Part shown: one piece after another, positions 3,899-64,000 of the stretch
Numbering within the stretch: the stretch's first letter is position 1
Layout of the letters: every line of letters starts with the position of its first letter
Source of the DNA: Oculina patagonica
Lineage: Eukaryota
DNA: 64,000 nt
Assembly (NCBI RefSeq): GCF_052425735.1
Contig: NC_135759.1
Span: 8,804,001 to 8,868,000, forward strand
Direction of reading: 5' to 3'
Translations under genes and position numbers: made by a program
The notes under the pieces: generated by a model
Databases searched by the model: none
What the model was told of the DNA's origin: nothing
The model's input: only the letters and a program-made list of their open reading frames with translations

Positions 3899-4112
3899 AG
3901 GCGCGTTTACACGACTGAAAAATTTGGGTACGGACCCGTCAAAAAATTGGTCCGGACCTAACCACTTTTGTAGAGAAACAGTTAAATCAAAACGGGGCCA
4001 TAGGCGCCTATGGCCTCGTTTTGATTTAACTGTTTCTCTACAAAAGTGGTCAGGTCCGGACCAATTTTTTGACGGGTCCGTACCCAAATTTTTCAGTCGT
4101 GTAAACGCGCCT
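3899..4112. mobile_element. 214-bp near-perfect palindromic MITE with PIF/Harbinger-like GGCGCGTTTACAC ends
   Basis: Symmetric about 4005/4006 (ATAGGCGCCTAT) with only a couple of mismatches. It explains mirror ORFs 3924..4124 and 3404..4087. Superfamily assignment is inference. Confidence 0.85.
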
Positions 4113-6698
4113 CTAGATCGCTAGTACCTTCCCAATGATGTGACCTTGTGCCGCGTATCGTGCTCACTGCCCTGCGCTGTCTCTTCGAGTCTCTGTATAG
4201 TATTTGTTTCTTTTTCTATTTCTCCACGGGAAGTTAACACGGAAACCAGCTCGAGAAACTCAAACTAGAATTGAAACGTTTCCAATTCTATTATCTATAA
4301 CGGTACTAAACCCGAAAATTTACTTCAACAATTTGCCTTGCATGCCTTGTTCGTTTTCCAAGTCCCACATGAACGTCATCAGCAGGGCTTTAAACCATTC
4401 AGTGCTTGGCACTAACTATGGCACTAACTTTGGTTAAGAAGGAAAAAAACACCAGTATTCGATTCGGCGAAAGTATGTCACGCTACAGTTTAATTAAGTG
4501 TTCCGGTATTTTCGAGTATTTGATAGAGAAAAAACCGCCAATCTGTGACGTGCAAACATTAATCCTCTTTTCTTGCCCAAAGTAACTTTAGTTTTTTTAG
4601 GATTGATACTTAACATCCATGAATTGCAATAGGAAGATAACATATTTAGGCAATTTTGTAATCCTATTTTGGATCTTGATAATATTACGGGAAAAACGGG
4701 ACGAAACTAAACCCTCTTTCCGCGGTATTTCACTTGCTACTGACTCATCTAAGTGATCTGACACCTGTTAGTTCAAGTAACAATGTTTTACACATTGGAT
4801 GCTAGATGCAAATTTTACAAATACAAGGCTCGACAGATAGGATCGTTTCTTTTTTTTTTTTTTCGTACAAATCTTTTTTTCAAGTCTCAACTTCAATACT
4901 CTCACTTAACACCCTTTAGGTATCTGATTTAGTGCAACAGTAATGCGATCGTAACATTTTTAATTAATTATATGAAGCAGGCGGCGAACTGGCCGCCTGG
5001 CCATGTTATTTACTATTTTTAGCTAGAGTTTTCCCTGTGCCTTTTAACACGATTGCATGCAGACACAGTATCAGTTAGTTATGTCAGTTATATCGCGTCC
5101 ACATCTTCCAGCTTTGGCTTAGATTTAAATCAAAACCGGCAAATGGGTACTTATTCATTTAGTGATTTTAATCAGACAAAGCTGGATAAGATTCAGGATT
5201 GTCAGTTCCGATCTCTCTTTTGCACTGAGATGTTTTGCCAAAATCATCCTGACCCAGCTCCATTTTCTGTTCGTTTCTAAATCCCTTCTATTTGGACGGA
5301 AGCAAACATTTACAACAATTACTATATGTAATTAATCGTACAAGTATCGAAAGCCTGAAGTCTTGGCATGGTCCCACTTAAAACCGCTCCGTCTAGAATT
5401 GATGATCAGTCCCTGAGATTCCATAAAAAGTGTTGAATAGTGGCGTTTTGCCATCGAATTATTCATTCTTAATCTTTATGTCGAAATACGTTTCTGTATA
5501 TATTTGTCGTAATCTGTTTGATTCCAGCATAAAATACTTTTCATCCAATTCCGAACTACGAGTTTAGAAAGGTCGAAAAATGGTTGATCCTGCGTTAATC
5601 GGAACTTAGACACTGCTATTTATTGCCATTTCGAAGGCGGAAGGACAAACTAGATTCACAAAGACTATGAGTGGCAAACCCACATAAATTGTCAAATATT
5701 GTGATAATATTGACGACTCAAACCTTAATTTTTTGTCAGGCAATCCAGTTTGTTCACGGATGTGGAACGTTTATACAGGAGTCGATCCTCGTTAAAGTTG
5801 TTACGGAACGTTTTTCGGTAAAAAAAAAAAGGTAGATTTTGAAACAACACAATATTCTGTTATCGTAAAGCTAGTGTATAGGTGTTTTACACCTGCTCTT
5901 AGAACAAAGCCTTCGAATAAGTTATGAGCTCCAGGTTTTAAGGGCGTGAAAAGTAATATCCTTAGAATTTTCTATATTTGTAATAGCTTTCGTAAGTCAA
6001 ACTGAGTTGTCGAAACGCTATTGGCTACAACTGGTATATGACAATTGTCCTTTTTGTAATAACTTTGAGTTCTGCCTGTAAGCGAGTGAGTCAAGATCGC
6101 CATTAAACGCCATGTTCCTTGATGATGTTTTGGTCCACTTGATATAAAAGATCCCGGAAGGTGGCAGGGCACTTCCCGCTCAGCCATAGATTTAAATCCC
6201 CGAAAAAGCCCCTGCTACAAAGTACTGTACCCAAGAAGTTTTTTGGTATTATATTGTTCAGTCAACACAAATCGAAAACGCTTGTTGCCATTAGCATGAT
6301 TTCGAATTTTGGTTGTCTTTTTGTAAGCCGCTATGTCACAAAGTGATTAATAATTGTTGATAAAAAGTAAAGTTTTGATCAAGAAAAACAAATAGTTTTC
6401 AGTCGGCCGTAAAAATGTTTCTGGGTTTCTCTTAACTGGCGAGGAATGATATGAAAGGCGGGCGGCCCAAGAGGTTAGTTTCTGATATTAGAGGGGTTCG
6501 TTATATCCCAGTTCATTAAAACTCCGTGATGGTTGCACTATGTTACCTTCCCATAGGTGGCCCTTCCACTGAGCTATAAGGGAGACTCGGGAATTGGGCC
6601 ACTTTTAAAAACAAAACTGTAAGCACGACCTTCGTAAAAGCAAAATGAATCGCTCATATTCTATATCTCAAACCTTTCGTTCAATTTTTTTCTGTTAG

Positions 6699-9600
6699 GA
6701 AATCACGGAGACGTTAAGGCTTTTGACGGCCCAGGGAATGCTGTAGCTCACGCTTTCTACCCTGATAACGGAGGAGACATTCACTTTGATGATGACGAGA
6801 ATTGGACTATCGACTTTTTACTGCCGACTGCAGTACATGAGATAGGCCACAGCCTGGGACTGCGCCATTCTAATGTGCCAGGTTCTGTCATGACTTCATT
6901 TACAACCAACTTAAACAGCAAAGTCGTTCTATCTGATGACGATGTCAACGGTATCCGCTCAATTTATGGTATGTGACACTTCCGGTTGCAGCATTATGAA
7001 ACTAATAATAATAATAATAATTTATACATTTATATAGCGCTAAAACTATAAATATTCTAAAGCGCTGTTTACAATATGTAAAAATAATATAAAAATATAA
7101 AAATTAGAATGAACCTACATACAAATCAAACTAGAAAAAGTGTGATTGAAAAGTTAAAACGCTTAAACGCGAAATGCTTTCTTAAAAAGGAAAGTCTTCA
7201 ATTGACTTTTAAAAGTCTCCACTGATGACGCTTTGCGAATGTCAACAGGAAGCTCATTCCACAGGGAGGGGCCTTCCTTGGCAAAGGCTCTATCCCCCAA
7301 AGTTTTCAGCATTGTCTTAGGGACAACTAGCATATCATGGCCATCGGAACGCAGGTTGTACCGACCAACAGGCTTGGCCTTCAAAAGGCCAGAGATGTAA
7401 GGCGGAGCTTTCGCATGAAGGGCCTTTGTGTTGACTGAACAGACGTATGGTGAGATCTTCAGAATTGAACTCCTGAGAACTAATAAAATTAAAAAAGCTA
7501 CTTTCACATAAAGAAAGATAACACCCTCAATGACCCTTACCACTGACGGCTACAGGTCAACAAACACAGCCCCAGAATTAAAAGAAAATACAAGACGTAA
7601 ACGGTTATTTATTGTTAAATTAAAACACGAAAGAAGCACCGAGGAAATTAGAGAAATAAATTTATTGGGTACCTTTGTTGGATCATGAGCTACTGTAATA
7701 TATAAATTTAGGCAAGCCTAAAAGCGGAGCTCCCCATTTATTTAATTTTCACTGAAGCTAACAAGGTTGTCATTCTGGTGAATATTATAAAGCGGCCAAA
7801 GCACTAATGTAAACGGTGGTTTCATGGATGCACTGAAACACATTTTTAAAACTCGCTCACGGTTAAACTGAATATCTGCGGTGCGAGAAAAATAATAATC
7901 TTAAAGCAGAGCAAATGTAACTCATGGCACGAGAAATTACTTAAGAGTACAGTAAATTCTCTGCTTTCTAGCAATAGAAAATAGTTTAGCGATTCTGTTA
8001 TAGTTTTGCTTACAAAAGAGACGCGGAATTTTTTGTGGTTAAGTATCCCCGTCTCACTTTTCTGGCCTGTGGTTATTGAAATTAATTGACATCGCTGCAC
8101 TCAACTCGGTTGCTCACGTACGCACGTACGCATCAAAAACTTTAAACTTTTATCTCTTGCCTTTTACACAGTTTGAACAACTTTTACTGTTCACTAAATT
8201 ATCTCTACGAAATATTCAGTGTAAAAGTAAACTTAATTGAGGCAAATAAATTTGTTTGCAATTACTTAAAAAACTCTGAGTCAGTTGTAATCACAGCTCG
8301 CGCTCGAAATACATGTAGATGGGGTATTAAACATTATTTTCAGAGCAAGTTTATAGTTTAAATAAATTAATTTTGGTCGAGCTTTCTGCTTTGTCGTCGT
8401 TAAGCACTTTGGAAATTTTCACTTAAATATACTGTATGAATTTTTTCTGCGAGAAAATTTACGGCTTTAAGTCGGAATAAACTTACAACAATATGAATGA
8501 AACTCACACCTGTCAGGACATCACGACAAGGGATAAAAAAATCAAACTACGGCCAAAGAATATCAACTTACGGCAATAGACAATCAGTAAACCGATAGCA
8601 AAATAAAACCAACTCAGGGTAACAAAAAGAGTCAACTCGTGTAAGCGTAAATGTACCACAGAAGCGCCGACTAAATGAAGGCAAAAGCGGCAAAGTATTT
8701 ACGAAAAGATCCAAACCTAGCCGATACAAATCATCTTGAAACTGCGTTCAGAAAGTAAAAACATTTTTTGTCGTAAAATTAGGCTAAGTAATTCAGTAGA
8801 GTTTGTTACCTTACATCAGGGACTTGTTCTTAACTTCAGGGGACTTGATCCATGCATCAATGCATGCTTCGTTTCAACACAATCATTTTAGCTTAATTGT
8901 ATATTCTTGATGATGACAACCGCAGGCAGATTCAACCGTAGACAAGCAAACTGGACTTACACAGGGAATATATCTTTCAACAACGCAATTATTTGGAGTC
9001 CTCGTATTCTCGTTTGTTACAACGTCACGGAATATAGACGATTTCTCTGAGACTTCTGAGCACATCGTACAATAAATAGTTTGGGAAAAAGTCCTGTGTC
9101 GCTCCACTTACTCGCGATTCATTCAATCTCGGCACAGTTAACACCGCGCAACAAATTTTGCCGCGCTTTCATACCATCACTTCGTTTAGATCTAACTGAA
9201 ACGTCCACATCATCCAGTCGATAAAAAATTAGTCATTTGCTTGTTTTAGAGTTCCGAAAAATGCGACCAGAACCAATAAAATTAACCTGTTCAGCTGTCG
9301 AAAGAGAGCAACAGTTTTTTGCGTTAACACCAAATATACGCACTGAGATTTCGATACAATCACTTTGAGGGTAAACAAAATAGAGCAGTTGGATAATAAG
9401 TCTCTCAGACGTTTTGCTGTGTAGTGTCTCTGAGTAATCTTTCCCGTTGTCTGTATTTTGACTTACCCTGCAAGCTTTATTTGCAGTTTGTTATTTTCTT
9501 ACTTTCCTTTAACCACGGGCGACCTCGTTCCCAGGCCTAATCCGTGTGTAAGTACGGTCGGACGGTCGGTTCGGACGGTCACGTGACAGCCAAAATTTTT

Positions 9601-10506
9601 CGGCTCGATGGTTTACCAAAAATTCTAAGGTATGAGGGTACGCTCGCGCGCCTTCGGCACGCGCGGGAGCTCCGCTATAAAACATCTTTAAATGGGTATC
9701 TGTAGACGAGACTCTTATTGGCGACAATTAGACACGCCTAATATGATTTCCGAACCTTCGTTTTTTATCAAAACCCATTCTTGCAGCATTTAAAGATTGA
9801 CACCATTATATTTGTAACAAACCATTTTTTTCTCCAAAGAAATCCTACTATTTTGTCAGGCTATGTTTACTAAAAAGTAGTTTTCTATTCTCTCTTTGAA
9901 GGTTACTGTAGGCCTACAGTGACTGCCATTGAATACTGGATGGGCGATGGTAGAACTTACATTTTCAACGGGGGTAGTTTCTGGCGTCTCAACGACGCAA
10001 AAGACGAGAGCGAACGTGGCTACCCAAAGACAGTCAATCCGTCATGGGGAAATGTCCCAGATGACATCGATGAAGTTTTTCTCTGGGGTCACAACTGGAA
10101 TACCTATTTTTTCAAAGGACATATGTATTACAAGTATAACGATGACCAGAAAGTAGTGGAAACGAACTATCCTAGAAACATCTCGCAAGGATGGCCTGGA
10201 CTGCCGGCAGATGGAATTGATGCCGGGTTTACTTGGAGTAAAGACAGAAGCTACTTTTTTAAAGGTGACCAAGTGTACTTATATGATAACATCAATGACC
10301 AAGTCGCCTTTGGATACCCCAGACCGATTAGTGAGGTATGGCCCGGTCTCCCTAATAACATCGATAGTGTTTTTCTGTGGTATTATGACGGTGTCTCGTA
10401 CTTCTTCAAAGGCCATTATTATTATTGGTGGGATGATGTTACCCACGTTGCAAAGGGTCCCTTTTTTATCGGCAAAACCGAATGGAAGAACGTATGTAAA
10501 GTTTAG
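6699..10506 (+). CDS. Matrix metalloproteinase (M10A), last two coding exons: 6699-6968 (catalytic) and 9902-10506 (four hemopexin repeats); 5' exons not located
   Basis: Exon 6699-6968 (ttag|...g|gtatgt) encodes [36 protein letters not shown]...[12 protein letters not shown]...SVM (HExxHxxGxxH plus Met-turn). It joins in phase 1 to the exon at 9902, giving [12 protein letters not shown]...YFFKG repeats...WKNVCKV*, with both hemopexin cysteines present. Confidence 0.93.
7003..7430 (-). mobile_element. 5'-truncated L2/CR1-group LINE 3' end in the MMP intron
   Basis: ORF 7163..7543 encodes APPYISGLL...YNLRS...GDRAF...[11 protein letters not shown]...[10 protein letters not shown], the typical ORF2 C-terminus. 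It is followed by an AGCGCT..AGCGCT stem-loop and a (TTA)n tail. Confidence 0.85.
7699..9678 (-). mobile_element. Non-autonomous Helentron-type element (HINE/DINE-1-like), ~2 kb
   Basis: Subterminal inverted repeats AGCGGAGCTCCC (7723-7734) and GGGAGCTCCGCT (9665-9676); 3' hairpin TTTAGGCAAGCCTAAA (7707-7722); GC-rich hairpin and a (GGAC/GGTC)n microsatellite near the 5' end (9555-9580); T/A-run flanks. Confidence 0.7.
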
Positions 10507-31125: not shown

Positions 31126-55802
<24,677 letters not shown>

Positions 55803-56490: not shown

Positions 56491-57965
56491 TATTAGCAAC
56501 TGGGCGTCAAAAAACACGGAAAAGGTCGCGAACCGATTTCACAACTGGTTTTACTCTTACACCTGAGCATTAAACCAGTAAACAGCGCAGAAAACGCAAA
56601 CTTAAAAAATACAGGTTCCTCTCAGAAGTTAGCGGTAAACAGCAAAACCAAAGAATGCCAACTTTAAAAAAAAGTTATTGAGGCATTTGCAAAATACGAG
56701 AAAAACCAAGGGGACTTTGCTGCAAAATAGGTATAGTTATTCGGAACGCGGTGTTTTTATAAGCACAAAACGTTTTATGTTTTTGACAAGAAGAAAATTG
56801 ACTTTTTTATAGGCATTGTCATAGCTACACCGTGCATACGAGATCTAGGAAACAGCTTAACTGCGGCTGGTAGTTGTTAAAAGCCTCTCAATCAAAAGAA
56901 GGCTTGTGGATTACGCTAAGCTTGGAAACGCCACTTTGGTATTAACATCTACCGTACACGCTTCATTCGCGGATTTATGGGCTTATCCCAATAATGGCTC
57001 ACAATGTTTTTTGTCAGTTTGTCTTTGAAAGGGCCTTCGTTACTTTTATGTAGCAATGAAAACTCTTTGAAGATAGCCTAGACCAGAAGGTCTATAAAAT
57101 TCCCCAAACGAAAAGCGCGCTTTTATTGGTTAATTGGTTACGAGACGTTTCTTAGCACGGCTTTCATAGATTAAAATTTTCATCATATGCATATATTAAC
57201 AGAACTTTCTTCAGATTATGCGCGCAAAAAGCACAGAATGAACAAAGAAGGCCTATTTTTAATGAGTACAAATAAAACGTAAATCAAGCTTTTTAGTATT
57301 GGTGTTAACTTGCTAGATGTGAATTAATATAAGACGTCGAAAACTAACTAATGATTCACATTTTGGTGGAAGGATATTTTCCACACATTATCTCAATTTA
57401 ATGCGTGAATCAGCGAAGACTCAATCATATGCAAAAAAGATGGTTAGCAAAATTGGGAAGAGTGTCAAATTTTGTTAAATATTTTATATCTTTGGTTTTC
57501 TAGTTACAAAGACGCGAAAACCGAACGTTGTTTCTTAAATATAAACTATCGCTGAATATAAATTTTACCGGTAGAAAAAAAATATAAAAGAGAAATTCGT
57601 TTGGTGTTTATATTCGTGGTTTGAAAATAAAATAACTGCGTACATTTCAGCTGTCATTTTTATGCTAGCCCTTTGTGGCGAAATGTTGATTTATTCGAGG
57701 GCTAGCCATGAAATAATGATATGACGCTACTCAAGATATAGCCCTGGGAAGTATTTAATGCAACCTCAACCAATCAGGTGGCCCGCAAGCCACCTGCGTG
57801 GAGAAAAATTTGCACAAAATAAGATCGTTTTGCCAAACCATCATAACATTTGCAAAGCTATGCCGCATGGCCCAGCTGACCGAAAGCCATAAAAAATCCC
57901 AGCTCTGTGTCACGAATTTTGGATTTGTAACCGTCGGCGCTTTTCAAGAAAACGAGAAAAAAGAA

Positions 57966-58979
57966 ATGGCGGATATACTTCAGAAGATTGGCGAAGACAA
58001 AGAAAAATCGACCGCTTTAGAAGATGCTTTTAAATCTTGCAGACATCCTGATTCACTGAGCATGTCATTTCTCGCCGCCGACATCGGAGTAACACAAGAA
58101 GAAATTGAGGTAATTTCAAGCACAATCATGTCTTGTTTTCTTTTTCCCCTTTTAGAAAAATCAACAGCCATATTTTTGAAGTATTGAGTTGTGTTAAAGA
58201 AATTTCGCTCTCGAAATGTAAAACATTGCGTTTGAACTTTTAAAGAAAAATTTAATATCGAATCGTTTCTTTACAACCGGCTGAATTATGCCACAATTAA
58301 TTACACTAGATACGGAAGTCTGTTCAAGACTGATATGTACTTTTCGTGCAATACCAAATATCAAACTTATTTGAAAAATGTTTGAGGCGAAAATACTTTT
58401 AAATCTTTATTCTGAAATACATTCCATAGATCGGAAATAAGCTTTCAAACCGATTTACTTCGAACTATATTAGTGCCTTTTTGTAAACAAACTGCCTAAA
58501 GTAGGATTTTTTTGTTTGACAATGTTTTCCTGATATATTGAGTGAAAATGTTTTATTGCTGAATAAATTTTACTACGCCGGAAGCCGAAAGTTGAAATTG
58601 AATTTAGCTCACACAGTTTGTCAAATCGTCAATATTAAAAATATTTCGTGCTGTTTTAAGTTTCGATGTAAAACTGTATTTCGCAATAATTAGCCATTTT
58701 CTGAGCTTTATGTATTTGTCTGAACGCATTTTGTCAAACTGAATATTTAATCTCTTTTAATTACACAGCATAAGGTATAATAATGCGATGGGCGGAACTT
58801 TTTTCTTATTTTTCTCAGCCTTCTCTTATTAAAATGTTCGTATTGAATTTAATTTTATTGCACTTTTTTAGAACTGGTTTGCAGCAAGATTGACAAAATG
58901 GAGGAAGGAAGAAGGATTTGTACCCATTGCAGAACGGGCGGCAATTTTAGCTCAAAACATGAATAAAAATGCTAAGTAA
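57966..58979 (+). CDS. HOPX: Homeodomain-only protein (HOPX-like), two exons 57966-58109 and 58872-58979, 83 aa
   Basis: Spliced product MADILQKIGEDKEKSTALEDAFKSCRHPDSLSMSFLAADIGVTQEEIE|NWFAARLTKWRKEEGFVPIAERAAILAQNMNKNAK*. It aligns to human HOPX (LEYNFNKVDKHPDSTTLCLIAAEAGLSEEETQKWFKQRLAKWRRSEG, recalled). Phase-0 GT-AG intron one codon before WF; CCAAT at ~57770. Confidence 0.88.
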
Positions 58980-59239
58980 TAGACAAATTGGTGACGGCCC
59001 GGAGGCAAAGGTACTTTGTAAATGGAAAAAGGATTGTGCAACCCTGGAATACGTACTTAGCAGAATTAAATTAGCGACAATGCAATAATTCACTACAGTC
59101 GCAAAATAACATTAAAAGCCATATACTTTCCCCCTAAAACAAGATTGTAACTCAAATGTTTGAGAGTTCGACTGCTGTAACTATGCTATGCCACTTAACC
59201 AATGAAATCCAATCTCATATTGCAAAGCAGAATATATAC

Positions 59240-59556
59240 TAGTTATGCAACGCTTTCGAGTGGTATACTATGGAATATCCCACGAGTCACTTGTATTTTC
59301 TCGGTATACACACGAGCCTTTATAATTAGGCGAGTGTGTATACCAAGAAAATACAAGTGACAAGTGGGATATTCCATAGTATTCCACGAGAAAGTGTTGT
59401 GTAACTATTTTATACCATGCCATAGAAAATACGCTTACTAAATTTCGTCGAGAATACAATCGCAGCGCACGATGGGAAGGTTGGGTTGAATACCGTCGAA
59501 TATACAACGGCTTTCCTGTATTCTGATTGGCTGTATTTTCTATGGCATGGTATAAA
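59240..59556. repeat. Two abutting hairpin/inverted-repeat modules (59240-59407 and 59409-59556)
   Basis: The first has ~80-bp arms around TTTATAATT. The second has TTTATACCATGCCATAGAAAATAC / GTATTTTCTATGGCATGGTATAAA arms. Confidence 0.8.
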
Positions 59557-60164
59557 TCATTTTAACTCAATTCCAAGTTGAAAGGCGATGAGCCGAAACA
59601 ACTGAGGTCTGATTTTTTTTGTAATTTTGCAATGGTGATTTATTTTCTATTGTTCAAGTGGTCCTGGTTCTTATTGCAGTCGCATTGCAATAGATTATTA
59701 TTTAACAATTGTATTCTATATTGAATGTCGACTTATCCGAGTATATTGTTTACGGGAAATTGTATTGAAAATAGGAATTATATTCTTATTCAAAAGTAGA
59801 TTTCTATAAACAGTGCAAATATAAAATTGCCATGTAATTTTCAATGAAAATGTTTGGGGTTAGGGCGCTGGCGCCTCTAGCTATGGAGACCCCTTTGTAT
59901 TCAGTCGAACGACAAAGACATAACATGCCAATATTAGTTATTTCATAACTGTAAGATGTAATATTTTCATGGAATGCAGTCATCTTGTTAAAAATCATAA
60001 CTTAGCGTTAAAATAAGCGGACTGTGATAAAGTAAAATGATGAAGTATGGTGATAAATAAAATGGATTTAAATGCTATGGTTGGTTTTTGTTTTCTTTGC
60101 TATTTTTTTTGTGTGTTCGTTTTCTCTTTCGGATAAAAATCGACCGGATCATGTTAGCATCCAC

Positions 60165-60322
60165 AGAGAGCAGGGATGGCGCTGAGGTGAGATAGAACGC
60201 TCCCCTCCCCCCAATGTGGCCCGGGTTCAAATCCCGGACCGACGTCATATGTTGGTTGAGTTTGTTGGTTCTCGTCCTTGCTCCGAGGGGTTTCTCCGGT
60301 TTTCCTCCCTCTACAAAAACCA
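60165..60322 (+). mobile_element. tRNA-derived SINE
   Basis: GAGAGCAGGGATGGCGC head, B box GGTTCAAATCCC, body GGTTTCTCCGGTTTTCCTCCCTC. Confidence 0.75.
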
Positions 60323-60875
60323 TGCAACACTTTTTTTTAATATATACAACAGAGGCGCACTCATACTTACAAAATAAGAGCACTACTTACAACAAGAATG
60401 TGTGCACTTTATTTTATAAATGGACGTTACTTACAATACGGCACTAACACTAACGATGCGTATACAATACTTACGATCAGTCAAACGATCAGTCAAACCT
60501 CTTTCGCCGGGGATCTAGATTTTGTCCGTAAGAGCGAGTGTCCGCAATAGCAGGGTGTCCGCAAGGCGAGAGTTGACTGTAGATGTAACCTTTGCCGTGG
60601 AAGCTAAGATCTTTATTGAACCCATAAATTAGATCTTGTTCTGAATTCCAATTCGATCGAGAATCCACGGCCCTACAAGCTTCTGACTTTAAACACAACC
60701 ATGTATAAATAAAGGTTGTTTATTTACTTTTATTTTTTCGCATTTATAACAGCTTTCCATATTTTTTTAAACTACGTTTGAATGAAGGCAATTAATCATT
60801 GTTTACTGTGTTACACATAGGAGTAGAAACAATTATTTTTTAGAAGACTGATAAGCAGAACCGTTCAGCTAAACC

Positions 60876-63451
60876 TTAGAAAGAGAGCAAGTACGCGCTT
60901 AAGCAAGCCAAAACAACATAAGATACAAAATGTGGGACAATCCGACCAGCTGTATCCTTTGGAGCGGTTGTCACTGGCTGCATGGCCGCCATAGCCTTCT
61001 TGATCAGGTTATGTTTACCACTCAATATTCCAGTATTGCTGTGTTTAGACAGGCCAGAATTTGCATCCGAAGAGGTATGGGCAGCCCATACAACTGTTAC
61101 TTCGGTATCATCCTGAAAATCAAAACATTTGGATGTGACATTTTGCTGCCAATTACAATGTTAATAGTTCATTATCAAGCTCTCTGCACGCATTGCAGTC
61201 CTATAATCCTGTCATACGTATTGTTATAATCATGCCCTCTTCGTGCATTGTGAGCCTACAATTTTAGATAGTTTATTATCTGTCTGTTCGCATTTTAAGT
61301 CATCATCCCTGAACTTATAAATTCCAACACTGTTTTGCCTATTTCCACTTATTTAATAGGCCGATATATAGAGCTGTTTTCGCTTGAGTGTCGAAAGTTA
61401 TCCTTGTTTCCTTTTAATTGCACTACTACGCTTAGTAATTGATTTACCTTATTATAGGAAATTAACGTTTGTGTTAATTAAGGTAATTAACGCGACTTAA
61501 ATTAACGCGAATCGAAGGAAAAATTACTTCTCAATAAAGGAAATTAACGCGAAAGAGAGGGTAACATTTTAAAATGAAGGAAATTAACACGACGTTCACA
61601 AAGAAAATCACTTGTTGAGACAACAGGAAAAACTTTATTTCAACACTATGCGTATAATCCGAGACGGAAACAATTTCCGTGTTACTTCGAGTATTTTTCA
61701 GAACTTCAGTGATATCATAGAATTCCAACCTGATGAAATAATGCTTTATTCTAGGAGATTAGAATGTCTTGACTGTATCGAGAAGTTTGGGCCAAAAGAA
61801 CGAAAATTAAGGTCATGGAAATTAACGCTCCACTTAATTAACGGCACGGAAATAAACGTTACCAAAAATTAACCCGATTAAATTAACGTTAGTTTCCTAT
61901 AATAAGCCCTGATAATAAGGTAAAACACTAGCACCGTTTTTACAGCCAATCAGAAGTAAAACCAAAACCAATGGTATCTCGCTCGAGCACGTTTTCACGC
62001 CCTTAGTGCCGGCTACATGAATTTGCTTCGAGTTTTGATTGGTTCACTGAATTACCTGTGTCCTTTGTGATTAGCCAGAGGGATAACTTTGATTTTGGTT
62101 TTGCGACACTAAATTAAAAATTACTCTGACTTCAAATTTTACTTCATTGTCTCTCGTATTTGTAAACCCTTACCGTAAACTGCACATCATTGGCACTGTC
62201 TCCTGTATTAGCATCCCTGGAGAACTCCACAATGGTATTTCCACCATCTTCACTTGCCTTAATAAGGTTAAAGTTCTGCTTTGCATCTTTAGGTGGATTT
62301 CCTGTCGTGGTACTCCAGAAATCCTGCAAGAAAAAGCAAACTTTTTGCAGGCAACGATCAATGTAATTCCTGAGCAGTGAGTGATGAGAAAGGTAGTATT
62401 TTAAAGTTACTGCTCTTACAACACAATAGAGTGGTTCGGGTATTTGCATGGCACGTCTCGAATTTTAATTGAGAGAGAAATATTTATTAATCTATGTTGC
62501 TAAATCTTCCGTTTGCCCAGTTTTCAGGTCTTTTTTAATAAGCGCTCACCTTGATGTTAGGAAAAGTTAATAAGCGCCCAGCCTCGAATAAGCACCCCCT
62601 CCACACCAAAAAACCTAAATGCACAGGGAGGCATGCAGCAAAAAGAGTTCACTAATTGACCCTATTGACAAGATTTAAATGGACTAAGTATTATTAAGAG
62701 ACTTCCGCGAACCCCGAGTTTTCTTTGTATTTTACAGAAACTTTTAATAAACAGTTAAAATTCTGCTTTCGTTCATTTTTACGTTTTGTTATGATTATTG
62801 TTTTGTTGCAAATAAACTTACTTCTTGCAGAAAATGCTGAAGATTTGGTAAGCGCCCGTCACGAATAAGCGCCACTCTCAAGGTCCAAAAATTTAATAAG
62901 CGCATATACGGTATTTATACGTCAAATGATCAGACCATTCAAAAGGATTCGAACATTTTTTAAGCTTGTCACCTCGCTGCTAAGGAAAACATCCAAACAT
63001 AAAATAAACAACAATTTTATTTACTTACATCAATGTATCCCGCACCAGAAGCGTACCCAGCAACCGCTATATCGTAATTCACCATGCTCTTTCCATCAGC
63101 AGTCTTGGTAAATCCTACCGCACACCAGCCTGTTGTTTTACAAGTCATTTTGAACATCAACTTGCTGTTGCTGTAAGTCCATTGTAGCTTAAAGAAACCA
63201 TCAGGAGAGACGAGGCTTGCATAAGATGGCGGCTTAGCTGTGGAGCCTCCTGCATCCATTGATGAGGTAGGAAGCATGGCTGTTGCGGATGGTTGTATGC
63301 CCGAAGATGGCTGCATGGCCGACATTGCCATGGATATCAGGTTGTGTTTACCACTCAATATTGCCGTGCCGCCAGCACTGTGCTTTGTCAGGGCGTTATT
63401 TGCATCGCTGCTGGTATGGTAAGCATACACAACTATGACTTCAGTATCATT
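60876..63451 (-). CDS. Tandem DOMON-domain protein, last three coding exons (63451-63029, 62323-62174, 61112-60876); probable GPI-anchor signal; 5' part beyond the window
   Basis: All junctions are phase-0 GT-AG. Encodes FKLQWTY...GWCAVGF...SMVNYDIAV...YID|DFWS...PPKD...TIVEFSRDANTGD..D|DDTEVTVVWA...KH, which includes the DOMON Met and His positions. Ends in a hydrophobic tail VPHFVSYVVLACLSAYLLSF*. Confidence 0.9.
61370..62128. mobile_element. AGAG-terminated MITE with a nested TA-flanked element (~61447-61920) rich in AATTAACG motifs
   Basis: Outer ends AGAGCTGTTTTC..GAGTGTCG / CGACACTAAATTAAAAATTACTCT; inner ends CCTTATTATAGGAAATTAACG / CGTTAGTTTCCTATAATAAG. A truncated outer-family copy lies at ~46216-46375. 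Confidence 0.65.
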
Positions 63452-64000
63452 CTGCAAAAAAAAAAAAAAAAAAAAAAATAAGACGGATTCCGCTGAAAGT
63501 TCGAGCAATGAGTGCAAAAATTAAGTACCAAAAGCCTAGTCATGCATAGTACGGTAACATTTTATATACTATTTGAAACATCTCACTGAAATTCATTTGT
63601 CTTAGTGACCCTGTGATTATAAACTCTAAAGCATTCTCGAGAAAGTTTAAGTTAAATCTTTTAAAAGTGTTTAAAGCGCGCGCTGATTTATTTTATACGG
63701 GCGTGAAACTTCTGTTTTAACTGAAATGTAGATAATTTTTCAAATCCATTTTTCTCTAGAAGGTAAGCTTAAGAGCTAGAGTTTAGGTAGGGTTTTGTTA
63801 GCTTTACTCAAACTGTTACCATGCTATGAGATCTCTGAGGTACCTTTTTTGGCCTGTATTGTTCGAGTGTTCGGCAGAAACCATCTTAAACAAACTACAA
63901 AACCAATATCACAGCTTGAACAAATCAATTTTTTTTGGAAAAAGAGATAACCGTTCTATAGATATTAAATTAAACTGGATTCCAATTCTCGTTTCTTTCA

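What the first reader, a model, noticed from the sequence alone, without database searches (positions are those of the whole stretch)
57966..58979. Hidden two-exon HOPX-like (homeodomain-only) gene in an apparently cnidarian genome
Seen in sequence: a 144-bp exon spliced to a 108-bp exon encodes an 83-aa protein that is almost entirely one atypical homeodomain. It has the HOPX hallmarks HPDS, LAAxxG, EE and WFxxRLxKWRxxEG. Helix 3 reads WFAARL, so it lacks Asn51 and Arg53, and there is no basic N-terminal arm. Established: HOPX is a non-DNA-binding cofactor of SRF and HDAC2/3, and PRD-class genes carry an intron between homeodomain codons 46 and 47, which is where this intron sits. HOPX was long described as chordate-restricted and, as I recall, was later reported in some lophotrochozoans. 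Inference: if the host is a coral, the HOPX co-repressor module predates the cnidarian-bilaterian split. The gene is small enough for annotation pipelines to miss, and the ORF track captures only exon 1.
Basis: partly seen in the sequence, partly recalled or inferred. Interest (0 to 1): 0.85.

Follow-up and report, generated by a model that had tools for sequence, protein, structure and literature searches.

The report
Coral homeodomain-only (HOPX-like) gene, already annotated
This stony coral has a small, spliced, expressed gene for an 83-residue protein that is almost only a homeodomain and has lost its DNA-contact residues; it is most likely the cnidarian counterpart of vertebrate HOPX, but public coral and anemone annotations already call it "homeodomain-only protein".

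Summary
Exon 1 (57966-58109) and exon 2 (58872-58979) are joined at a GT..AG intron between homeodomain codons 46 and 47. RNA contigs carry exactly this joint. The 83-aa protein matches Pfam Homeodomain, and its best solved relative is mouse HOP.

Orthologues of 74-94% identity occur in Orbicella, Pocillopora and Acropora. More distant ones occur in the anemones Exaiptasia and Actinia. All are already named "homeodomain-only protein(-like)" in NCBI or UniProt, so the gene is not hidden.

ML trees put the cnidarian proteins next to bilaterian HOPX with support 100/97-99. They still do so (94/99) after the DNA-contact columns are removed. An HMM built only from bilaterian HOPX scores every cnidarian copy 10-17 bits above any canonical homeodomain. 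The intron position, two-exon structure, acidic charge and loss of Asn51 and Arg53 are shared.

Caveats: an AU test does not reject placement among canonical PRD-like homeodomains (p = 0.22). The conserved C-terminal tail differs from the bilaterian one. No shared neighbours were found within the 10 kb flanks examined.

I found no paper reporting Hopx in Cnidaria; the published origin is the base of Bilateria. Verdict: a real gene and a probable HOPX orthologue (about 0.75). This is a modest extension of a known family.

The parts
57880..57965 (+). 5' untranslated region (minimum extent)
   Evidence: RNA contigs start at 57880 (X1) and 57893 (X4) and run into the ATG at 57966.
57966..58109 (+). 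Coding exon 1: 48 codons, homeodomain positions about 1-46 (helices 1 and 2 and the start of helix 3)
   Evidence: Translation. The GT donor at 58110 is seen. Exon-1 read-through ORFs of many corals match at 85-100%.
58110..58871 (+). Intron, 762 nt, GT..AG, phase 0, between homeodomain codons 46 and 47
   Evidence: The joint 58109|58872 is present in RNA contigs of two runs, and intron depth is about 3 against 17-200 in the exons. The same position and phase are found in Exaiptasia, Actinia, Patella and Antedon HOPX genes.
58872..58979 (+). Coding exon 2: 35 codons plus TAA. It holds helix 3 (NWFAARLTKWRKEE) and the cnidarian-specific conserved tail GFVPIAERAAIL.
   Evidence: Translation. Residues K57-L74 are invariant in five scleractinians. 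The tail is retained in a divergent anthozoan-like contig and in anemones.
58980..59237 (+). 3' untranslated region (minimum extent)
   Evidence: RNA contigs continue at exon depth to 59237, where a high-copy repeat begins.
53576..55802 (+). Last coding exons of the upstream neighbour, an SMC-family (SMC3-like) gene. It is not part of the gene but is conserved linkage.
   Evidence: Pfam SMC_N matches at 2.4e-19 and 1.3e-5. An SMC gene also lies upstream on the same strand in Exaiptasia.

Best explanation
This is a functional two-coding-exon gene of a stony coral. It encodes an 83-aa homeodomain-only protein that is the cnidarian member, and probably the orthologue, of the HOPX family. The protein folds as a normal three-helix homeodomain, but it has no basic N-terminal arm (I2, L3, K5). 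It carries A50, A51 and L53 where DNA-binding homeodomains have Q/K50, N51 and R53, and it is acidic. It is therefore expected not to bind DNA specifically, and to act as HOPX does in mammals, as a small nuclear adaptor that binds other transcriptional regulators. An extra C-terminal helix (GFVPIAERAAIL), invariant across the five scleractinian copies aligned and nearly so in anemones, is a likely partner-binding surface specific to cnidarians.

Shown: gene structure, splicing, expression, conservation, purifying selection, homeodomain fold, and affinity to HOPX. Inferred: loss of DNA binding, the cofactor role, and the identity of the partners.
For: - Structure and splicing.
- Homeodomain: Pfam 8.2e-9. 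The AF2 model has pLDDT 77.6 with helices at 12-24, 30-40 and 44-61 plus 67-81. Foldseek hits homeodomains with TM up to 0.9 normalised by the target.
- Best PDB sequence hit is mouse HOP (2hi3/1uhs, 4.8e-9), ahead of aristaless at 6.5e-7.
- In a search of 1.84 billion representatives with a coral-only profile, the best single-domain hits outside corals are bilaterian HOPX at 50-46 bits. Canonical PRD-like domains start at 44.9 bits.
- ML trees: cnidarian plus bilaterian HOPX form one clade at 100/97 (172 rows), 100/99 with anemones added, and 94/99 after removing the N-arm, positions 50/51/53/54 and the three post-homeodomain columns.
- A bilaterian-only HOPX HMM scores the 10 cnidarian rows at 61-69 bits against at most 51.6 for any other homeodomain.
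- The same 46/47 phase-0 intron and two-coding-exon layout occur in anemone, limpet and crinoid HOPX.
- pI is 5.1-6.6, like HOPX at 4.8-6.3, against more than 10 for canonical homeodomains.
- The nearest ESM Atlas clusters by features and by structure are 'Homeodomain-only protein' of chordates and arthropods.
- dN/dS is 0.08 against Acropora.
Against: - AU test on 51 rows: a tree with the cnidarian clade inside canonical PRD-like homeodomains is only 10.7 lnL worse and is not rejected (p-AU 0.217).
- Under the cnidarian profile, HOPX and canonical PRD-like domains are interleaved within a few bits.
- The bilaterian tail GLPxxxxSVxD and the upstream LPR motif are absent. The cnidarian tail is unrelated.
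- No shared neighbours with Patella or Antedon HOPX within 10 kb.
- Outgroups were only the best 150 hits, not a curated set of all PRD families.
- No functional data exist for any invertebrate HOPX, so loss of DNA binding and the cofactor role are inferences from residues.
Confidence: 0.72

Rival explanations
1. Convergence: a hexacorallian PRD-like (Arx/Alx-type) homeobox gene was independently reduced to a homeodomain-only protein and lost its DNA-contact residues. On this reading the resemblance to HOPX is parallel evolution, not orthology.
For: The AU test does not reject the cnidarian clade nested in canonical PRD-like homeodomains (deltaL 10.7, p 0.217). Canonical PRD-like domains score nearly as high as HOPX under the cnidarian profile. 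The C-terminal tail is different. No microsynteny was found. The 46/47 intron is common to many PRD-class genes (PMC2211742).
Against: The best ML tree has high branch support even without the DNA-contact columns. There is a 10-17-bit preference under the bilaterian-only HOPX HMM. Shared non-contact states include AA at positions 35-36 and G after helix 3, and the whole-gene layout is the same.
Confidence: 0.2
2. The protein is an atypical but still DNA-binding small homeodomain transcription factor.
For: It keeps W48, F49, R52, K55, R57, K58 and K5 and has a normal homeodomain fold.
Against: It lacks N51 and R53 and the R2/R3/R5 arm. Its net charge is -2 and its pI 5.4, against more than 10 for DNA-binding homeodomains. 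Mammalian HOPX has the same losses and is reported not to bind DNA (PMC2211742, PMC9179269).
Confidence: 0.07
3. It is a decaying gene fragment or a transcribed pseudogene.
For: It is very short and lies next to repeats.
Against: The reading frame is intact and the splice sites are conserved from stony corals to anemones. dN/dS is 0.08, exon 2 is invariant in the five scleractinians aligned, and spliced RNA is present at good depth.
Confidence: 0.01

Closest known systems
Vertebrate HOPX (mouse HOP; PDB 2HI3, 1UHS)
   Same: Homeodomain-only architecture of 73-83 aa. PRD-type 46/47 intron. L53 in place of R53, no N51, no basic arm, acidic pI. Shared helix-2 motif (L/I)AA(E/D)xG and helix-3 motif WFxxRLxKWRxxEG. 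It is the best PDB sequence hit, at 33-35% identity.
   Different: The coral protein has no one-residue insertion between helices 1 and 2. It has A50/A51 where the vertebrate has K50/Q51. It lacks the tail GLPSECRSVTD and instead has a longer helical tail, FVPIAERAAILAQN.
Invertebrate bilaterian Hopx. Molluscs are reported in Paps et al. 2015 (PMC5322547). Annelid, arthropod and crinoid copies are named automatically in NCBI.
   Same: No helix 1/2 insertion. Same intron position and phase, and same two-coding-exon layout. Sister clade in the ML trees. The thrips copy also has A51.
   Different: Bilaterian copies share an N-terminal P..LP(R/K) motif and the tail GLP(A/S)NxxSVxD. Both are absent from cnidarians.
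Canonical PRD-like homeodomains (aristaless/Arx/Alx; PDB 3A02, 3A01)
   Same: Same fold. 37% identity. The K55-W56-R57-K58 run and the 46/47 intron are shared. They are the next-best hits.
   Different: They have the RRxR arm, Q50, N51, R53 and a pI above 10, and they sit in large multi-domain proteins that bind DNA.

Membership tests
HOPX (homeodomain-only protein) family | The protein consists of little more than one homeodomain (about 70-130 aa). | tested here: met
   83 aa. Pfam Homeodomain covers residues 13-60, and the homeodomain frame runs from residue 3 to 62.
HOPX (homeodomain-only protein) family | PRD-class affinity with an intron between homeodomain codons 46 and 47 (Holland et al. 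2007, PMC2211742). | tested here: met
   Phase-0 intron at E46|N47, confirmed by RNA. The same holds in Exaiptasia, Actinia, Patella and Antedon. The feature is shared with many PRD genes, so it is necessary but not specific.
HOPX (homeodomain-only protein) family | Loss of DNA-contact residues (N51, R53, basic N-terminal arm). | tested here: met
   I2, L3, K5, A50, A51, L53; net charge -2, pI 5.4. This shows residue states only; DNA binding itself was not tested.
HOPX (homeodomain-only protein) family | [quoted passage not shown] | tested here: not met
   Spacing is canonical in all cnidarian copies. The insertion is also absent from mollusc, annelid, crinoid and some fish HOPX in the same alignment. 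It therefore defines tetrapod and hymenopteran copies, not the family.
HOPX (homeodomain-only protein) family | Family motifs: (L/I)(I/L)AAExG in helix 2 and WFxxRLxxWRxx(E/Q)G(L/F) in helix 3. | tested here: met
   FLAADIG and WFAARLTKWRKEEGF. A37, A38, G41, W50, R54, W58, R59 and G63 (numbered on the window protein) are at least 90% conserved across 25 cnidarian and bilaterian sequences.
HOPX (homeodomain-only protein) family | Conserved C-terminal tail GLPxxxxSVxD. | tested here: not met
   Cnidarians have GF(V/I)PIAERAA(I/F)L instead.
HOPX (homeodomain-only protein) family | Phylogenetic grouping with HOPX to the exclusion of other homeobox families. | tested here: inconclusive
   The ML clade has support 100/97, 100/99 and 94/99. 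The AU test does not reject placement among canonical PRD-like domains (p 0.217), though it rejects HOPX plus PRD-like excluding cnidarians (p 0.024). Outgroups were limited to the best 150 database hits.
HOPX (homeodomain-only protein) family | Reciprocal best similarity. | tested here: met
   Coral to PDB: HOP comes first. Coral profile to 1.84 billion proteins: HOPX are the best single domains. Bilaterian-only HOPX HMM: all cnidarian rows rank first by 10-17 bits.
HOPX (homeodomain-only protein) family | Conserved gene neighbourhood with bilaterian HOPX. | tested here: not met
   SMC upstream (window, Exaiptasia) and LIM/VHP downstream (anemones) are conserved within Hexacorallia. Patella (cyclin) and Antedon (ankyrin, Fam20C) share nothing within 10 kb. 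Chromosome-scale linkage was not testable here.
HOPX (homeodomain-only protein) family | Binds SRF and recruits HDAC2 without binding DNA. | not testable with these tools
   Known for mouse HOPX only (reviews PMC9179269, PMC6997107). No data exist for any invertebrate.

The most novel reading that the evidence does not exclude
A DNA-binding-dead homeodomain cofactor (HOPX) already existed in the last common ancestor of cnidarians and bilaterians. The slowly evolving hexacorallian copy preserves an intermediate state between a PRD-like transcription factor and bilaterian HOPX. Its invariant extra C-terminal helix would be a lineage-specific docking site for an ancient partner such as the MADS-box factor SRF or a class I HDAC.
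Probability: 0.3. Interest if true: 0.55.

Novelty: new member of a known kind. Interest (0 to 1): 0.38.

Why it matters
HOPX is an unusual homeobox gene: a homeodomain that no longer binds DNA and works as a cofactor in the heart, lung, stem cells and tumour suppression. The last explicit statement on its origin that I found in the literature is the base of Bilateria (Paps et al. 2015). A genuine cnidarian orthologue moves that origin back to the cnidarian-bilaterian ancestor. It would also offer a short-branched, less derived form for working out how a DNA-binding domain became a protein-binding adaptor.

The practical gain is small. Databases already carry the gene under the HOPX name, and the orthology, though likely, is not statistically closed.

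Tried and rejected
- The treekit AU test on 115 rows was uninformative. The constrained search found a better likelihood than the free search, because tree space is too flat with 63 columns.
- A full LG+C20 search on 95 rows timed out. PMSF searches on 95 rows never converged in the time allowed. I therefore cut the set to 51 rows with one fixed site-frequency file.
- The many multi-homeodomain proteins at the top of the representative search are DUX-like or repeat arrays that rank high only by summed score. Per-domain ranking removed them.
- Foldseek against the PDB cannot tell HOPX from other homeodomains; HOP ranks 37th and 48th.
- Microsynteny with Patella and Antedon: none found.
- The contig of a further divergent copy (P0295) could not be fetched, so the organisms behind P0115, P0171 and P0295 remain unidentified.
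- Rfam found nothing in 57000-60500.
- One DNA search used a mistyped pattern and is meaningless.
- The dN/dS estimate against Exaiptasia failed because of saturation and a misaligned register.
- The pseudogene reading is rejected on conservation.

Full report
**1. What is in the sequence**

- On the + strand an ATG at 57966 opens a 144-nt exon that ends at 58109 before gtaatt. A 108-nt exon follows ttttag at 58872 and ends with TAA at 58977-58979.
- The two pieces translate to 48 and 35 residues, an 83-aa protein.
- Counting from W48/F49 of helix 3, the 762-nt phase-0 intron lies between homeodomain codons 46 (E) and 47 (N).

**2. Is it transcribed and spliced?**

- Contigs of public RNA runs of the same organism were laid on 57700-59400.
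- A 1024-nt contig in run X1 covers 57880-58107 and continues at 58870-59237. The tool places the cut at GT..AG two bases further right, which is 58109|58872. A contig in run X4 shows the same joint.
- Depth is 17-200 over the exons and about 3 over the intron.
- The transcript therefore starts no later than 57880 and runs at least to 59237, where a high-copy repeat begins.

**3. Family and conservation**

- Pfam gives Homeodomain at E 8.2e-9, 35.6 bits against a cut-off of 22.9.
- The best solved-structure sequences are the two mouse HOP entries (2hi3 at 4.8e-9, 1uhs at 7e-9), followed by aristaless at 6.5e-7.
- Full-length 83-84-aa relatives of 74-94% identity exist in Orbicella faveolata, Pocillopora meandrina, Acropora cervicornis and several unnamed transcriptome assemblies. 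The host is therefore a robust-clade stony coral, which agrees with earlier notes on this genome.
- K57 to L74 (KWRKEEGFVPIAERAAIL) is invariant in five scleractinians.
- dN/dS against the Acropora coding sequence is 0.08, with dS near saturation.
- A profile of cnidarian copies also found Exaiptasia diaphana (89 aa) and Actinia tenebrosa (85 aa) proteins.
- Divergent copies lie on unidentified metagenome contigs. One of them (L001-L003) carries exon 2 with the same 46/47 split and the same tail.
- The sources already name these proteins 'homeodomain-only protein' or 'homeodomain-only protein-like'. The claim that annotation pipelines miss the gene does not hold.

**4. Relation to HOPX**

- *Database search.* A coral-only profile searched against 1.84 billion representatives returned many long multi-homeodomain proteins. 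These are DUX-like arrays that rank high by summed score. Ranked by best single domain, the first non-coral hits are bilaterian HOPX: thrips at 50, a snail at 49, human-type at 46. Canonical PRD-like domains start at 44.9 bits.
- *Distribution in Bilateria.* The named HOPX-like proteins span molluscs, annelids, Hymenoptera, thrips, ticks, a horseshoe crab, a scorpion, a millipede, a barnacle and a crinoid.
- *Shared residues.* In a 25-sequence alignment the cnidarian and bilaterian proteins share L16, F20, the helix-2 motif (L/I)AA(E/D)xG, and W48, R52, W56, R57 and the G after helix 3. The tail differs: GLPxxxxSVxD in Bilateria and GFVPIAERAAIL in Cnidaria. The one-residue insertion described for human HOPX is absent from cnidarians, and also from most invertebrate and some fish HOPX.
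- *Trees (IQ-TREE, LG+C20+F+G4 by PMSF).*
  - With 172 homeodomains, cnidarian plus bilaterian HOPX form one clade at 100/97. Bilaterian HOPX are monophyletic at 99/94.
  - After removing the N-terminal arm, positions 50, 51, 53 and 54, and the three post-homeodomain columns, the clade remains at 94/99. This guards against convergence through shared loss of DNA contacts.
  - With the two anemones added, support is 100/99.
- *Topology tests.* The built-in test on 115 rows was uninformative. On 51 rows with one fixed site-frequency profile:
  - The free tree equals the tree constrained to cnidarian plus HOPX (lnL -5083.97).
  - Forcing cnidarians into the canonical PRD-like group costs 10.7 lnL and is not rejected (p-AU 0.217).
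  - Forcing HOPX with the PRD-like group to the exclusion of cnidarians costs 15.5 lnL and is rejected (p-AU 0.024).
- *Reverse profile.* An HMM built only from bilaterian HOPX scores all ten cnidarian rows at 61-69 bits and no other homeodomain above 51.6. The cnidarian HMM ranks HOPX first but interleaved with PRD-like domains. This is what a short-branched, less derived family member would give.
- *Gene structure.* Exaiptasia, Actinia, Patella and Antedon HOPX genes have the same phase-0 intron between codons 46 and 47 and the same two-coding-exon layout.
- *Language-model search.* The ESM Atlas puts chordate and arthropod 'Homeodomain-only protein' clusters first, both by features and by structure.
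- *Neighbours.* An SMC gene lies upstream on the same strand in the window and in Exaiptasia. The two anemones share a LIM/VHP gene downstream. Nothing is shared with Patella or Antedon within 10 kb.

**5. Likely mechanism**

- AlphaFold2 on the Orbicella orthologue (94% identical), using a 40-sequence alignment, gives mean pLDDT 77.6. The helices are at 3-9, 12-24, 30-40, 44-61 and 67-81, that is a homeodomain plus a lower-confidence fourth helix. Foldseek returns ordinary homeodomains.
- The DNA-contact positions read I2, L3, K5, A50, A51, L53. Net charge is -2 and pI 5.4. Bilaterian HOPX have pI 4.8-6.3 and canonical homeodomains more than 10.
- Mammalian HOPX has the same kind of losses and is reported not to bind DNA, acting through SRF, HDAC2 and other partners (PMC2211742, PMC9179269).
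- I therefore infer that the coral protein is a non-DNA-binding nuclear adaptor, and that its invariant tail helix is a probable interaction surface. None of this is shown experimentally for any invertebrate.

**6. Novelty**

- Holland et al. 2007 listed Hopx among families without invertebrate orthologues.
- Paps et al. 2015 found it in molluscs and dated it to the base of Bilateria.
- Eight full-text searches found no paper that reports Hopx in a cnidarian: seven paired Hopx or 'homeodomain-only protein' with cnidaria, Nematostella, coral, anemone or Placozoa, and one listed several cnidarian genera alongside Hopx. Recent cnidarian homeobox surveys listed show zero occurrences of the word.
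- The evolutionary inference therefore appears unpublished in the literature I could search, although the gene models and names are public.
- I rate it a new member of a known family, of moderate interest. I put orthology at about 0.75.

Noticed in passing
window 59233-59414: A hairpin-like palindromic element with 87-nt arms, 85% complementary and 8 nt apart, lies just after the 3' UTR. RNA-contig word depth jumps from about 40 to 4,000-10,000 here, so it is a very high-copy element present in many transcripts, probably a MITE. Rfam finds nothing.
   Followed up: partly
window 59409-59556: A second inverted repeat abuts the first element: perfect 24-nt arms 100 nt apart. It may mark the ends of another small transposon.
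   Followed up: no
window 53576-55802 (+): The last exons of an SMC-family gene end about 2.1 kb upstream of the HOPX-like gene. They carry the signature and Walker B motifs and a C-terminal SMC_N match. The SMC-HOPX linkage on the same strand is conserved in Exaiptasia. A run of N (about 55220-55590) interrupts the last SMC intron and was left untouched.
   Followed up: partly
window 62144-63517 (-): Two exons of a DOMON-domain gene lie on the minus strand downstream (Pfam DOMON at 3.3e-9 and 1.2e-7).
   Followed up: no
L001-L003 (P0115); L004-L006 (P0171); P0295: Divergent copies of the cnidarian HOPX-like gene sit on metagenome or ENA contigs of unidentified hosts. They share the FKECR(F/Y/H)PD and FVAAEIG motifs. 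L001 has a longer 107-aa product with the same tail helix. These could extend the family beyond stony corals and anemones.
   Followed up: partly
proteins P0138, P0223-P0265 (Hymenoptera HOPX-like): Hymenopteran HOPX-like proteins carry a one-residue insertion between helices 1 and 2 (FNRWPRAPH), like tetrapod HOPX. Molluscs, chelicerates, the crinoid and cnidarians do not. This may be a parallel insertion.
   Followed up: no
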